From positions 1,348-65,347 of the forward strand of contig NW_018405566.1 in NCBI RefSeq assembly GCF_002113885.1: 64,000 bases of DNA. Direction: 5' to 3'. The stretch is from Mizuhopecten yessoensis. Lineage: Eukaryota. This document shows, in pieces, positions 22,712-53,214 of the stretch. The notes beneath the pieces were generated by a model, which saw only the letters and a program-made list of their open reading frames with translations, had not been told where the DNA came from and did not search any database. Each line of letters starts with the position of its first letter. Within the stretch, counting starts at the first letter, position 1. The position numbers and the translations under genes are program-made.

Positions 22712-22867
22712 TGTAACAGCTAAGGTATATGAACGGAAAATACTGCCTTACTGGCAAGCTAGCTTTTCCTGTGATGCAGTATAACACCCGGGGATCCGCT
22801 CACTAGTTCAGCAACGTCGAGCTTGGTCAGTAGTTGGATGAATGATTTTCGTCAGGAGCCAATTACA
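22712..22867 (+). mobile_element. Solo LTR of the 5S-rRNA-containing TRIM
   Basis: TGTAAC...ATTACA; internal agttcagcaacgtcgagcttggtcagtagttggatg matches 5S box A to box C; homologous to the LTRs at 51125-51965. Confidence 0.75.
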
Positions 22868-49425: not shown

Positions 49426-49601
49426 TGTGTCAGGGTTCAATTGTACATAGGATTAAGGTCGCCTTCTAGCTTCGAGCTAGAGGGAATTTCCCTTTAGCTC
49501 AGTGGTAAAGCGTCCGACTAGGAACCTGGAGATCGAGGGTTCAATCCCCGGTGGAAGCACACTATTCTCTTTCCTTTTACAAATGGGGCCGTGACCAGGA
49601 T
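49426..49601 (+). mobile_element. LTR containing a tRNA-like Pol III cassette, followed by a tRNA-His-type PBS
   Basis: A box tagctcagtgg, B box ggttcaatcc; LTR end ccttttaCA at 49581; PBS tggggccgtgaccaggat 49584-49601. Confidence 0.6.
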
Positions 49602-49984
49602 ACCATACCACATACCATTAGTGATCGGTTTGTTTCAGAGGATAAATAGCTACCGATACGAATCATGAAATATGTATCATATTACTAATGCTAAGTTACA
49701 GAAAAGATATAACAAGTTATCTAAATTAGCACGATATACATTGATATGAATGTAAACAGACTGAATGAAATGTACAATTTCTAAATGAGTACCTACTGTA
49801 TCTTAGACGTACCTCAACATGTACTTTTGTTATATGTATTGCTGATTATGCCTTTGAATGAAATTTTAAAAAATTGAAAGAGAAAAATATACAGTATAGG
49901 TTTTAAACCATGGTGTCCAAGCCTTTATCAAATATAACGTCAATTAATGAAATATGTTGGAATGTTCAGTAGATCTCTACTCAC

Positions 49985-50110: not shown

Positions 50111-50637
50111 CTTTGAAACAAAAGAAACTGTTAATTAACATTTTACTAAGATGAGGGTAAAAAGAAGAATGGTAATATGAATATGGACATATGTATTAAA
50201 ATACGACAACTGGAAAATCATCTATTTTCGAGAGATTTTTAATTTATTGATCTTGAATAAATAATGTCGATCGACAAATGCATGGATTTTCCTAATTCGA
50301 TGACCTGGAATCAGGCCAAATCGACTCTTAAGAAGTTTCACCATAACAATATTGACGATATCTTTTCGCGAATTCATATCTTCAATCTTGATTATTTTTA
50401 GCAGAACGAAAACGCCAAACAAGAGGGATAAATACAAGTTGTAATAACTTATTAAATAATTTCTGTAAATTAAATAAGTTTTAGATAAAATCCTTTTGAA
50501 GAAATCAGCCTGTATTCACAGATATTTTCTAACCGTAAAAGAATTCTGTTGGAAATATTTAAACTAAGGTACTTCATAGAGATATCTACGTTTATTGCTT
50601 GAGACTTGTGCATGTGAATTTTCTTTCTTTATGTTAC

Positions 50638-50742
50638 CTTGCTTAAGTCTAATCGCCAAGCCGATTCCAATCATCAGCAGTATAAGGCTGGCTACCACAA
50701 TCAATGATAAACCAACATGGAAGTACGCTATTCCATTCTCAT
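50638..50742 (-). CDS. IgSF/FN3 receptor transmembrane exon
   Basis: DENGIAYFHVGLSLIVVASLILLMIGIGLAIRLKQ; tttcag acceptor, aag|gtaaca donor. Confidence 0.85.
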
Positions 50743-51124
50743 CTGAAATTATACAGCCACTGCTATTATATTTTTTGATAATGCCGTATAACAACGCTGA
50801 AATACAGCATTCCACCCTTATCTGAAATCTTACAGCCACATATATTTTTGTTTTATAATGCCGTATTATATGGAAAAACAGCATTCCATTTTGATCTGAA
50901 TTCATACAAAATCAATAATTTGATGTTTTAAGATGCGATTAATGCGAAAATCACGTTTAAATGTAAAAAGTTCTTTCTTTCTTTCTTTAAAATAATCGCA
51001 TGTGAAACAAATGACGCATTATTATGCCAATATTCACATTAAATTCCAGAATAAGTCTTTAGTTTCTTGGGTATGTATATAGTCCAATGTTAGACCAAGA
51101 GCTACTCGTAAACCTTTTTGCAAT

Positions 51125-51965
51125 TGTGACACAGCCAAACAAGAAAATCCTGCCTTAGCGATGCGGCATAACACGGGAACGCGATCACTAGTTCAGCAAC
51201 GTTGAACGTGGTCTGTGGTTGGATGGTTTACCGTCTATACGTTACATTTGGTGACAGCGGTAGGATTTTGTGGTATGTCGTGAAAGGCATGTTAAGGTGG
51301 TGGTTAAGGAAGGTAAAATGGTACACAAGGGGGGCTCAAGGGATTTTCAAGGTACAGTCTTGGGACTAGAAATAAAAAAGCAAAAGCAAAAGAATAAGAG
51401 GGTAAAACATTGCCTTACTGACAAGCTATTTTTTCCAGTGATGCGGTAAAATCCGGATGAAATGGTACACAGGGAAGACTAACAGAATTCCTAAGACCAA
51501 GTCCTTGGACCAGATTTCTAGGAGGGGAATAGAGAAACAGCCAAGGAATCAGAGGAGAAAATAATGCCTTACTGGCAACCTAACATTTTCATGGATACGG
51601 TTTAATCCTGGGACGCGGTCATGAGTTCAGCAACATCTCGTGTAGTCAGTGGCTGGATGGGATACGCATGTAAGTTGCTTTTGGTGGCAGTGGTGTGAAC
51701 CTGTGGTAGCATGTAAGGTCAGCTCTCGGTGGCTAAAGAAGGTATATGGTACACAGGAAGGACTCGCAGGATTTTCTAAGGCCATGTCTTGGGACTAGAT
51801 TCTCGTAGGGGAAGTGGGTTAACAGCCAAGGAAAAAGGGGGATAACTAATGCCTAACTGGAAAGCGTGCTTTCCAAAGGATGCGGTGTAAACCTTGGACG
51901 CGCTCACAAGTTCCACAAGGTCGAGTGTGGTCGTTACCTTGATGGCTGCCGACTTGCACGTTATA
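51125..51965 (+). mobile_element. Tandem array of a 5S-rRNA-containing TRIM (LTR-PBS-internal-PPT-LTR)
   Basis: Four LTR copies (one truncated), 5S box A/C in three, tRNA-Leu PBS at 51249 and 51682, purine tracts before LTR starts; unit ~287 bp. Confidence 0.75.
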
Positions 51966-52320
51966 ACTCAAGGTGACAGTGTCTAAAGTGACGTTCATAA
52001 CCGATTACATATGCTTTCACGCGATCTTTCTGAGATAGTATAGTCATATAAAAAATAATTGTATAGGTCAACACACTGTCAAATATGCAGGGATATATCA
52101 ACACACTGTCAGATATACTAGTATATATATACACACTGTTAGATATGCCGGTAGATATACAATGTATAGTAGGCCAACGTTTATTACAAACCACAAGCTA
52201 CATTGTCGACATGACACCTGAATTTATTTTGATATTGCATCGTTCAATATCAGAGTCAGTTAATTGTTATAAATATATCTCGCGACTTGACACAAATATG
52301 AAAACAAAAGTTCTACGAAC

Positions 52321-52470
52321 CTGATGATATGGCAATGTAGATAGATACTGAAGGACTCCTACCTACGGCATTGTAGGCCGTGACAGACACGCTGTAGGCT
52401 CTGTTCGCTTGAAGACCTGTGATTCTGCTTGAGAACTGTATATCTGCCTGAGCGTTACCAGACTTTATTC
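52321..52470 (-). CDS. FN3 domain, C-terminal half exon
   Basis: ITGLQANRAYSVSVTAYNAVGRS; phase 1 to 1 using the ttgaag acceptor. Confidence 0.8.
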
Positions 52471-53214
52471 CTTCAACACATAACAGAAACCTATGCAAAA
52501 GTACAGAAAAAATGCCCAGTGTCTTCTACACGAAAATATCTCCTGAATATGCCTTGAACATCATTCATATTTCAGAATGTGTATGGTGGATTTGATTTAG
52601 TCGTATATGTTTTTGTTCGCGATGAAGCAGAAAATTGTTACCCTTCTGGAACACATGGACCTGTGTTTCTTGTTTTTATCAAGGGTCACTATGTTAATCT
52701 TTTCTAATTGTCATATTTATAAGTTAAAATTACTGTTTGGTTCACACTTAAGTGTTTTACTGTCGTTGATTTAATACATAAGATGTTTGACTCTAATTAC
52801 TTTATAATATTGGGTTATCGAGGTTCTGTCAACAGCCTGTAGCTAGACACACGCTCTTAGTTCATATTTATATTAGCTACATACAGAACATAAGGAAATG
52901 GCTCTACATTTATGCAATTGTCTTAAAAATTTAAAATGAATAACAAGGAACACCAACCTTATTGTCATACATGTGATCGACTATTTACAGACAAACACTA
53001 AAAAAAATCAAAACACAAACGGATTGGGCAGCAGGCATAGCCTATTTAAGCCCTCTCCAAACACGGTAACAAACAGTGGTAAAAGCATAGACATAGACAT
53101 TAGAACACATACAAACACATATAAACAGGTTGATATTTATCGAATTAATAATTAAATTAGGGGAAACAACTACTAAATCATATCTTTATCATAATTGAAT
53201 AAAATGGTTTAAAT

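What the first reader, a model, noticed from the sequence alone, without database searches (positions are those of the whole stretch)
51125..51965. 5S-rRNA-bearing miniature LTR retroelement (TRIM) in tandem array in an animal genome
Seen in sequence: LTR1 TGTGAC(51125)...GTTACA(51246), PBS tggtgacagcggtaggat (51249), ~130-bp internal region, a truncated LTR2, purine tract aggaggggaa, LTR3 (~51532-51679), PBS tggtggcagtggtg (51682), purine tract aggggaagtggg, LTR4 (~51819-51965). Each full LTR carries gatcactagttcagcaacg..gtggtc..tggatgg, matching the 5S internal control region (box A to box C). Established: the PBS is complementary to the tRNA-Leu 3' end; plant Cassandra TRIMs have this 5S-in-LTR design and form tandem arrays; from memory, an animal counterpart (Ajax) was reported only from nemerteans. 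Inference: a non-autonomous, Pol III-driven LTR parasite, possibly new for this lineage, mobilised in trans by Gypsy elements.
Basis: partly seen in the sequence, partly recalled or inferred. Interest (0 to 1): 0.85.

Follow-up and report, generated by a model that had tools for sequence, protein, structure and literature searches.

The report
Fossil 5S-promoter mini-LTR retroelement array
A decayed tandem array of a tiny, non-coding LTR retrotransposon whose repeats carry a piece of the 5S rRNA gene sits in a scallop intron; this design was known from plants (Cassandra) and two ribbon worms (Ajax), so it is a new host lineage, not a new kind.

Summary
Window 51125-51975 is a degenerate array, LTR-INT-LTR(half)-INT(half)-LTR-INT-LTR-PBS stub, with a 285-bp period and units 73-80% alike.

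It belongs to a dispersed family of about 430-bp elements:
- 148-bp LTRs with TGTAAC...GTTACA ends.
- A 19-nt primer-binding site that exactly complements the host's own tRNA-Leu(AAG/TAG) plus CCA.
- A GGAGGGGGGAATAG purine tract.
- 4-bp target-site duplications: 6 of 15 perfect, against a 0.5% control.

LTR positions about 82-139 match 5S rRNA positions about 38-100 (box A, IE, box C), with z 7-12 against shuffles. The Rfam 5S structure model does not match, so only the promoter part was kept.

The family is old. LTR pairs have K2P 0.04-0.20, and the window array 0.30-0.34. At least 278 LTR and 68 internal motif sites exist, so solo LTRs are common. One lies at window 22712-22867.

The array lies in a spliced intron and shows no RNA of its own. 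The genome is almost certainly Mizuhopecten yessoensis.

The closest known relative is Ajax (Kojima 2024, nemerteans only). This family differs in its 4-bp TSD and full PBS, and its internal 3' end looks like that of scallop Helenus. Pol III use and the partner element remain inferred. Another window of this genome carries a first-reader note describing a 5S-LTR TRIM (s1-510882); I did not compare the two.

The parts
51125..51246 (+). LTR1 (122 bp). It lacks about 25 nt of the family LTR's 5' half, including the T-run.
   Evidence: It starts TGTGAC and ends GTTACA, and aligns to family LTRs at 77-84%.
51182..51233 (+). 5S-derived segment of LTR1. The box A-like part agttcagcaacgttg is at 51190-51204. 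The box C-like part tggatggtttaccg is at 51220-51233.
   Evidence: local alignment to the 5S fragment L032, z=5.8, 0 of 1000 shuffles as good. The Rfam 5S model does not match.
51249..51267 (+). PBS1, with 2 mismatches to the complement of tRNA-Leu(AAG/TAG) plus CCA. It follows a TT spacer.
51247..51379 (+). Internal region 1. Its purine tract is replaced by an A-rich (AAAAGC)n stretch.
51380..51456 (+). LTR2, 5' half only (family LTR positions about 6-78, with its T-run).
   Evidence: (family D1). Read against natural copies.
51457..51532 (+). 3' half of internal region 2, ending in the purine tract aggaggggaatag (51520-51532). A deletion of about 150 bp joins it to LTR2.
   Evidence: (D5, D11).
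51533..51679 (+). LTR3 (147 bp). Its termini are mutated (AGAAAC...GTTGCT).
51680..51817 (+). Internal region 3, with PBS3 tggtggcagtggtgtgaac (51682-51700) and a purine tract (51807-51817).
51818..51955 (+). LTR4 (138 bp), ending gttata.
51958..51973 (+). PBS remnant after LTR4 (about 9 of 15 positions match). The array is truncated here.
   Evidence: read by eye against the family PBS.
22712..22867 (+). Solo LTR of the main family elsewhere in the window. No PBS follows it.
   Evidence: 88-91% to natural LTRs; 5S similarity z=10 and 7.9.
50743..52320 (-). Intron of a minus-strand gene that contains the whole array. The array is antisense to the gene.
   Evidence: RNA-library contigs join 50742 to 52321. 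The skipped ends read CT..AC, which is GT..AG on the minus strand. RNA depth over the array is about 0.

Best explanation
This is a fossil tandem array of a terminal-repeat retrotransposon in miniature (TRIM) whose LTRs contain the internal promoter region of a 5S rRNA gene. That makes it an Ajax/Cassandra-type 'TRIMp3' element, here in a scallop genome.

Shown:
- The family consists of about 430-bp non-coding elements: LTR 148 bp, internal region about 140 bp, LTR 148 bp.
- They inserted by an integrase that makes 4-bp target duplications.
- Reverse transcription would have been primed by host tRNA-Leu(AAG/TAG) at a perfectly complementary 19-nt site, and by a purine tract next to the 3' LTR.
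- The LTR's 3' 60% derives from 5S rRNA positions about 5-100, with box A, IE and box C about 85% preserved.

Inferred:
- When the family was active, TFIIIA/TFIIIC/TFIIIB bound this 5S control region and RNA polymerase III started in the 5' LTR.
- Transcription ran through the PBS, the internal region and the PPT. It stopped at the conserved T4 run at LTR positions 53-56 of the 3' LTR, giving an RNA of about 285-300 nt with a very short terminal redundancy.
- Gag, RT and integrase came in trans from an autonomous LTR retrotransposon that uses the same tRNA-Leu primer.
- Arrays such as this one arose by unequal recombination between LTRs, or by template switching, as in other TRIMs.

The family is now dead, and this copy is inert intron filler.
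For: Family and boundaries:
- Hundreds of dispersed matches exist, most spanning LTR-INT-LTR.
- Homology stops sharply at TGTAACAG... and ...CGTTACA in 15 aligned copies.
- TSDs are 4 bp: 6 of 15 perfect and 5 of 15 with 3 of 4 matching. The control rate is 0.5%, and no signal appears at 3, 5 or 6 bp or at shifted offsets.

Priming sites:
- The PBS TGGTGGCAGCGGTGGGATT complements the 3' end plus CCA of tRNA genes matching that 3'-end pattern (25 exact sites in the genome). All six sampled loci hold tRNA-Leu(AAG) or (TAG) by ARAGORN.
- The PPT lies directly before the 3' LTR.

5S origin:
- LTRs score z 7-12 against two 5S fragments of the same genome.
- An alignment of 26 diverged LTRs shows box A, IE and box C as the best-kept blocks.
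- A T4 run at LTR positions 53-56 is present in 26 of 28 LTRs, and none occurs in the 5S-like half.

Abundance and arrays:
- 278 LTR-motif sites against 68 internal-motif sites, with reversed-pattern controls at 0.
- A solo LTR lies in the window.
- Arrays recur at other loci: C76668 (L006/L043) and C4063 (L026).

Literature: the same design is published for Cassandra and Ajax, including tandem arrays and, for Ajax, a tRNA-Leu PBS (PMC10886601, PMC7215508).
Against: - No transcription evidence. RNA libraries give about zero depth over the array, and only a 153-nt low-depth contig of some other copy.
- The Rfam 5S covariance model finds nothing, even at E<=10 on the best copy. The segment is not a 5S gene, and its promoter role rests on primary-sequence similarity alone.
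- The geometry is awkward. By box A spacing the start would lie about 10 nt upstream of the T4 run, so Pol III would have to read through it once. By 5S homology the start lies just downstream of it, which would leave no terminal redundancy.
- All sampled copies are old (best copy-to-copy identity 88%), so activity cannot be checked.
- No genuine 5S array is in the assembly for comparison.
- The partner was not identified.
Confidence: 0.85

Rival explanations
1. The element is a genuine TRIM, but the 5S piece is a passenger. It would be a remnant of a 5S-derived SINE or a 5S pseudogene that landed in an ancestral LTR. Transcription would have been by Pol II or by read-through from host genes, not from the 5S control region.
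For: - There is no RNA evidence for Pol III transcripts.
- The Rfam 5S model is negative.
- The T4 run sits upstream of the 5S-like part, not at its end, which is an odd place for a 5S-type terminator.
- About 16 nt are missing between the 5S-start-like part and box A.
Against: - Box A, IE and box C are the best-preserved blocks across very diverged subfamilies, while the LTR's 5' half varies more.
- The element length (about 430 bp, with a transcript under 300 nt) fits the Pol III range that Kojima discusses.
- Two independent precedents keep exactly this part of 5S, and Cassandra is reported as Pol III transcribed (as cited in PMC10886601).
Confidence: 0.2
2. It is a 5S-derived SINE (SINE3), or a satellite built from such a SINE, mobilised by a LINE and not by an LTR-element integrase.
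For: 5S-derived heads are typical of SINE3. The window copy is a tandem repeat with a 285-bp period.
Against: - Copies have no A-rich or LINE-like tail.
- They are bounded by two direct 148-bp repeats with TG..CA ends.
- They carry a tRNA-complementary PBS right after the first repeat and a purine tract right before the second.
- They have fixed 4-bp TSDs.
Confidence: 0.02
3. It is a local tandem duplication or minisatellite in this intron with chance resemblance to LTR-element features.
For: The units in the window are only 73-80% alike, and several landmarks are degraded.
Against: The same unit occurs at hundreds of unlinked places, mostly as exactly LTR-INT-LTR. An independent DNA run holds this array as assembled.
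Confidence: 0.01

Closest known systems
Ajax (Ajax-1_NGe, Ajax-1_LiLo; Kojima 2024, PMC10886601), a TRIM with a 5S promoter fragment in its LTRs from two nemerteans
   Same: - Animal host; total length 421/434 bp against about 430 bp here; LTR 154/163 bp against 148 bp.
- Only the box A-IE-box C part of 5S is kept, and it does not fold as 5S.
- The PBS is assigned to tRNA-Leu-AAG after a 2-nt spacer.
- The PPT is of the type GAAGGGGGGAATGA, against GGAGGGGGGAATAG here.

By eye against the published consensus:
- Both LTRs end 11-14 nt after GACCG of box C.
- Both share two changes relative to 5S (GAGCC>GAGCG and GGTTA>GGTCA).
- Both have a 6-7-bp hairpin just upstream of the PPT, with the stem kept by compensatory changes.
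   Different: - TSD is 4 bp here against 5 bp.
- The LTR termini are TGTAAC..GTTACA against TGTATA..AATACA.
- The PBS here has 19 nt of complementarity including CCA, against only TGGCAG in Ajax.
- The LTR 5' halves and the middle of the internal region are not recognisably alike.
- The host phylum is Mollusca, not Nemertea.
- The comparison with Ajax was by eye only.
Cassandra (plant TRIM with 5S rRNA sequence in the LTRs; Kalendar et al. 2008, 2020)
   Same: A 5S-derived Pol III control region inside each LTR of a non-coding TRIM. It forms LTR-INT-LTR-INT tandem arrays and has many solo LTRs (PMC7215508).
   Different: - Cassandra is 565-860 bp and keeps a near-complete 5S-like domain with its terminator and 5S-like fold.
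- It uses a tRNA-iMet type PBS (TGGTATCAGAGC).
- It is restricted to plants. Kojima judges its origin almost certainly independent of Ajax.
Helenus of pectinid bivalves (Helenus-1/3_MiYe, Helenus-1_PeMa; Kojima 2024), TRIMs with a tRNA-derived Pol III promoter in the LTR
   Same: - Same host genome. A Helenus-2_MiYe LTR lies 1.5 kb away at window 49426-49583.
- Same size class (405-425 bp) and 4-bp TSD.
- LTR termini TGTAAC...GTTACA.
- By eye, the last 45 nt or so of the internal region are alike: CCCC(T/A)GG...hairpin ...TCG-(A)GGA-CGA...-purine tract.
   Different: The promoter module in the LTR is tRNA-derived (box A/box B), not 5S-derived. The PBS differs (reported as tRNA-His or other types, not tRNA-Leu).
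biv-TRIM (Satovic et al. 2019, PMC6934838)
   Same: A TRIM of bivalves that also forms tandem arrays and solo repeats.
   Different: It has 202-218-bp repeats, a 77-80-bp internal region, no canonical PBS and no 5S segment reported. It is not among the sequenced bivalve genomes, which included Mizuhopecten yessoensis, where that search found similarity.
SINE3 (5S-derived SINEs)
   Same: The 5S internal control region serves as a mobile-element promoter module. Kojima proposes that a SINE3 insertion into an LTR gave rise to Ajax and Cassandra.
   Different: SINE3 elements have no LTRs, PBS or PPT. They have LINE-type tails and variable TSDs.

Membership tests
TRIM (terminal-repeat retrotransposon in miniature) | Two direct terminal repeats flanking a short internal region, total length under 1 kb, no coding capacity | tested here: met
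   14 measured copies are 419-457 bp, with LTRs of 140-161 bp and internal regions of 124-149 bp. An internal region of about 140 nt leaves no room for gag or pol.
TRIM (terminal-repeat retrotransposon in miniature) | PBS complementary to a tRNA 3' end just after the 5' LTR, and a PPT just before the 3' LTR | tested here: met
   The 19-nt PBS complements the host tRNA-Leu(AAG/TAG) 3' end plus CCA. The PPT GGAGGGGGGAATAG abuts the 3' LTR.
TRIM (terminal-repeat retrotransposon in miniature) | TG..CA termini and target-site duplications of fixed length | tested here: met
   Termini are TGTAAC..GTTACA. TSDs are 4 bp, perfect in 6 of 15 copies against a control rate of 0.5%.
Ajax / TRIMp3 with 5S promoter (Kojima 2024) | [quoted passage not shown] | tested here: met
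   z 7-12 against 5S fragments of the same genome. See also the alignment. In the window, LTR1 scores z=5.8 and the solo LTR z=10.
Ajax / TRIMp3 with 5S promoter (Kojima 2024) | The 5S-derived part does not form a 5S rRNA structure (promoter only) | tested here: met
   The Rfam RF00001 model gives no match at E<=10 on the window copy or on the best family copy.
Ajax / TRIMp3 with 5S promoter (Kojima 2024) | 5-bp TSD | tested here: not met
   0 of 15 copies have a perfect 5-bp TSD, while 6 of 15 have a perfect 4-bp TSD.
Ajax / TRIMp3 with 5S promoter (Kojima 2024) | Sequence homology to Ajax-1_NGe / Ajax-1_LiLo beyond the 5S block (common descent) | tested here: inconclusive
   Compared by eye only with the published consensus. 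The LTR 3' end, two 5S substitutions, the hairpin and the PPT are alike, and the rest is not. No alignment statistics could be computed.
Ajax / TRIMp3 with 5S promoter (Kojima 2024) | Transcription by RNA polymerase III from the 5S-derived promoter | not testable with these tools
   No RNA lies over the array and all copies are old. Kojima states this is unproven for Ajax as well.
Cassandra | Near-complete 5S-like domain with 5S-like fold and terminator in the LTR; tRNA-iMet type PBS; plant host | tested here: not met
   There is no 5S structural match. The PBS is tRNA-Leu. The host is a bivalve.
SINE3 | Single 5S-derived head, LINE-related or A-rich tail, no LTR/PBS/PPT | tested here: not met
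   Searches show two LTRs, a PBS, a PPT, fixed 4-bp TSDs and no tail.
Helenus | tRNA-derived sequence (box A/box B) in the LTR | tested here: not met
   ARAGORN finds no tRNA in the window, and Rfam finds no tRNA match in the elements. The LTR module is 5S-derived.

The most novel reading that the evidence does not exclude
The scallop family and nemertean Ajax would be one ancient spiralian lineage of 5S-promoter TRIMs. That lineage would share its backbone with the tRNA-promoter Helenus elements of the same scallop genome: TGTAAC..GTTACA ends, a hairpin plus purine tract at the 3' end of the internal region, and 4-bp TSDs. On this reading, Pol III promoter modules (5S or tRNA) and PBS types have been swapped on a single TRIM chassis that serves one lineage of autonomous LTR retrotransposons.
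Probability: 0.3. Interest if true: 0.6.

Novelty: new member of a known kind. Interest (0 to 1): 0.4.

Why it matters
In the searchable literature, TRIMs with a captured Pol III promoter are a recently named class (TRIMp3). Their 5S branch in animals rests on two closely related ribbon worms.

- A mollusc family with a textbook-quality PBS, a clear PPT and clear TSDs shows that the design is not a nemertean oddity.
- It gives a second animal data point for asking whether such elements arose once or repeatedly.
- It hints that 5S and tRNA promoter modules were exchanged on a common backbone.

There is also a practical use. These LTRs are a source of 5S-like hits and of repeats with a 285-bp period. 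Bivalve genome annotation should mask them as transposable elements and not call them 5S pseudogenes or satellites. For the host gene, this copy is inert intron content.

Tried and rejected
- **Rfam at gathering and at E<=10**: no 5S hit. The 5S claim therefore rests on primary sequence only.
- **Search for the host's true 5S genes**. Only a 5' 68-nt fragment in two copies (L032/L033) and a 3' fragment (L034) are present. The top RF00001 hit is on a 629-bp contig with a nematode-type SL1 leader and is probably contamination. The two fragments were used as the 5S reference.
- **Younger copies.** The best copy-to-copy identity is 88%. Elements chosen for an exact PBS are just as decayed, with LTR pairs at 69-79%.
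- **Autonomous partner.** At least four LTR-retrotransposon families carry the identical 19-nt Leu PBS followed by gag-like ORFs. One of them (L074/L102, 5 copies at 85-91%) ends its LTR with CCTGCACGTTACA, against the TRIM's CCCGCACGTTACA. Overall LTR and internal similarity to the TRIM is not significant.
- **Hairpin-PPT motif outside the family.** A scan of all held sequence found it only in TRIM copies.
- **Expression.** Reads and contigs give no support for transcription of this copy. That is no evidence against past activity.
- **Formal alignment to the published Ajax and Helenus consensus sequences.** It was done by eye only.
- **Majority line.** A majority line was printed under the alignment as a reading aid. 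It was not saved or used, and every later query used natural copies.

Full report
**What is in the window**

Reading 50600-52500 and the repeat finders shows a diverged head-to-tail repeat with a 285-bp period between 51125 and about 51975. Each period has a 122-148-bp unit (the 'LTR') and a spacer of about 135 bp (the 'internal region').

The order is:
- LTR1 (51125-51246).
- Internal 1 (51247-51379).
- The 5' half of LTR2 (about 51380-51456), joined by a deletion of about 150 bp to the 3' half of internal 2 (51457-51532).
- LTR3 (51533-51679).
- Internal 3 (51680-51817).
- LTR4 (51818-51955).
- A PBS-like stub (about 51958-51973), where the array breaks off.

The only correction is that LTR4 ends at 51955, not 51965. 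Units are 73-80% identical, with K2P 0.24-0.34.

**It is a member of a dispersed family with LTR-retroelement anatomy**

A search of the window's own genome (987.6 Mb, 82,659 contigs) found hundreds of candidates, most covering exactly LTR-internal-LTR. Re-querying with a natural copy gave 43 scored matches at 79-88%.

In a MAFFT alignment of 15 copies with flanks, homology begins abruptly at TGTAACAG and ends abruptly at CGTTACA.
- Directly after the 5' LTR come TT and TGGTGGCAGCGGTGGGA(TT).
- Directly before the 3' LTR comes GGAGGGGGGAATAG.
- Fourteen measured copies are 419-457 bp long, with LTRs of 140-161 bp and internal regions of 124-149 bp.

Target-site duplications are 4 bp. Six of 15 are perfect and five more match at 3 of 4 positions. 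The rate for mismatched left/right flank pairs is 0.5%. There is no signal at 3, 5 or 6 bp or at shifted offsets. This is the signature of integrase-mediated insertion. It excludes both a SINE and a mere satellite.

**The primer-binding site**

The pattern GGTTCGAATCCCACCGCTGCCA occurs 25 times exactly in the genome. In all six loci sampled, ARAGORN calls tRNA-Leu(AAG) or tRNA-Leu(TAG) there. With CCA added, the complement is the element's PBS over 19 nt.

A second PBS variant (TGGTGGCAGCGTAGTGAC) marks a subfamily. The window's PBS1 and PBS3 are decayed versions of the same site.

**The 5S segment**

- Natural LTRs aligned to the two 5S fragments present in this genome (L032: positions 1-68; L034: positions about 32-120) give local scores 7-12 SD above shuffles.
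- LTR positions about 82-139 correspond to 5S positions about 38-100. Box A-like AGTTCAGCAACGTCG, IE-like CGTGGT and box C-like TGGATGGGTGACCGCCCG differ from 5S at one position each.
- Upstream, GATGCGGTATAACC resembles 5S positions about 3-16, with about 16 nt missing in between.
- Across 26 LTRs from very diverged subfamilies, these blocks are the best conserved.
- The Rfam 5S covariance model finds nothing, even at E<=10. Only the promoter part survives, not a foldable 5S RNA, which is what was reported for Ajax.
- In the window itself only LTR1 is individually significant (z=5.8, 0 of 1000 shuffles). LTR3 and LTR4 reach z about 2. The solo LTR at 22712-22867 gives z=10 and 7.9.

**Abundance, age and arrays**

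- A 26-nt box C motif with up to 3 mismatches occurs 278 times. A 29-nt internal motif occurs 68 times. Reversed-pattern controls give 0. The ratio of about 4:1 implies many solo LTRs.
- The Leu PBS (up to 1 mismatch) occurs 204 times. Of 40 exact sites fetched, 21 are preceded by a 5S-like LTR end belonging to assorted, strongly diverged subfamilies.
- Within-element LTR pairs have K2P 0.04-0.20, mean 0.13. That is hardly closer than LTRs of different elements, at 84% against 82% identity.
- No young copy was seen, so the family is long inactive.
- Arrays with three or more LTRs recur at C76668 and C4063, as described for Cassandra, biv-TRIM and LTR-11_DR.

**Context and expression**

Contigs from RNA libraries join 50742 to 52321. 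The skipped ends read CT..AC, which is GT..AG on the minus strand. The array therefore lies, antisense, inside a 1,578-nt intron of a minus-strand gene.

RNA depth over the array is essentially nil, including in 1.9 Gb of raw RNA reads. A DNA contig from an independent study spans the whole stretch with three differences, so the array is a real, fixed or common allele. A 153-nt low-depth contig of some other family copy in a metatranscriptome is not evidence of Pol III transcription.

**Host**

- The assembly size and contig number match what I recall for Mizuhopecten yessoensis ASM211388v2 (from memory).
- Independently, window 49426-49583 is about 97% identical, by eye, to the published Helenus-2_MiYe LTR consensus from that assembly.
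- The 5S fragments are of the lophotrochozoan type.
- I therefore take the genome to be that scallop or a very close relative.

**Mechanism**

Shown: the anatomy needed for tRNA-Leu-primed reverse transcription, PPT-primed plus-strand synthesis and integration with 4-bp duplications.

Inferred:
- Pol III drive from the 5S control region.
- Termination at a T4 run at LTR positions 53-56, which is kept in 26 of 28 LTRs while the 5S-like half has none. It is the only candidate terminator.
- A transcript starting in the 5' LTR and ending at the T-run of the 3' LTR would be about 285-300 nt.
- With a start about 50 nt upstream of box A (LTR position about 43), the terminal redundancy would be only about 12 nt. 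That is comparable in scale to the 18 bp quoted for Cassandra. It requires read-through of the same T-run just after initiation, and this step is unresolved.

**Comparison with known families**

The literature search and Kojima 2024 show that 5S-in-LTR TRIMs are known as Cassandra in plants and Ajax in two nemerteans.

The scallop family meets the operational definition of Ajax: an animal TRIM with a partial 5S control region in the LTR. It also shares Ajax's size, tRNA-Leu priming and PPT type. It differs in these respects:
- 4-bp instead of 5-bp TSDs.
- Different LTR termini.
- A complete 19-nt PBS, against TGGCAG only in Ajax.

By eye, the LTR 3' ends, two substitutions in the 5S block and a hairpin plus purine tract before the 3' LTR are shared with Ajax. 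The stems are AGTCTCG/CGAGACT here, TGACTCG/CGAGTCA in Ajax-1_NGe and GGATCG/CGATCC in Ajax-1_LiLo, so three pairs change on both sides.

The same hairpin-PPT module and the TGTAAC..GTTACA termini are also seen in Helenus-1/3_MiYe of the same genome. This suggests a shared backbone or a shared partner. These comparisons are leads, not tests.

biv-TRIM is a different element.

**Partner**

At least four LTR-retrotransposon families with gag-like ORFs use the identical Leu PBS. One shares 12 of 13 terminal LTR bases with the TRIM. No wider similarity was found, and no pol sequence could be fetched. 'Gypsy' therefore remains untested.

**Verdict**

It is a new host lineage and a somewhat different variant of a known, recently described kind. 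The copy in the window is an inert fossil.

No family consensus was built or used for searching. A majority line was printed once under an alignment and not used afterwards. No step toward restoring an active element was taken or proposed.

Noticed in passing
window 49426-49605: An LTR with a tRNA-like cassette (box A/box B), followed by AA and a tRNA-His-like PBS (tggggccgtgaccaggat). By eye it is about 97% identical to the published Helenus-2_MiYe LTR consensus. This is a second Pol III-type TRIM 1.5 kb from the array, and it helps identify the host as Mizuhopecten yessoensis.
   Followed up: partly
L031 (G000:C66098, 629-bp contig): The best RF00001 hit in the genome (110.8 bits) sits next to GGTTTAATTACCCAAGTTTGAG, the nematode SL1 spliced-leader sequence (recalled from memory). 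The contig looks like a nematode 5S-SL1 unit and so is probably contamination in the assembly.
   Followed up: no
G000 as a whole; L032, L033, L034: No intact host 5S rRNA gene was found in the assembly. Only a 68-nt 5' fragment in two near-identical loci (C5589:2980715 and C2985:626378) and one 3' fragment (C5199:104980) were seen. The 5S array seems to be unassembled or withheld.
   Followed up: partly
L074, L102 (C13:395978, C5106:606454) and L075/L086/L105, L077/L090/L108, L103/L113: Several low-copy LTR retrotransposon families carry the identical 19-nt tRNA-Leu PBS followed by gag-like ORFs. The L074 type ends its LTR with CCTGCACGTTACA, nearly the TRIM's terminus, and is a candidate partner.
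   Followed up: partly
window 50730-50908: A 79-bp unit repeated 2.3 times (76% matches) overlaps the exon/intron boundary at 50742/50743 of the minus-strand gene. Another first-stage note calls it a triplicated splice acceptor.
   Followed up: no
window 52070-52159: A 30-bp tandem repeat of 3 copies (AACACACTGTCAGATATGC...) lies in the same intron, just downstream of the array.
   Followed up: no
L011 1985-2057 (minus strand): A tRNA-like sequence (Rfam tRNA, 32.2 bits, just over the cut-off) lies about 75 nt downstream of a TRIM copy. It may be a tRNA-derived SINE or a Helenus LTR.
   Followed up: no
family internal region, last 60 nt or so (e.g. L035, L036, L038): In single-sequence folds the purine tract (GGGGGGAAT) pairs with an upstream ATTCCCC, enclosing the AGTCTCG-GGA-CGAGACT hairpin. 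This could be a cis-acting structure. Variation among copies is neutral decay, so covariation within the family is uninformative.
   Followed up: partly
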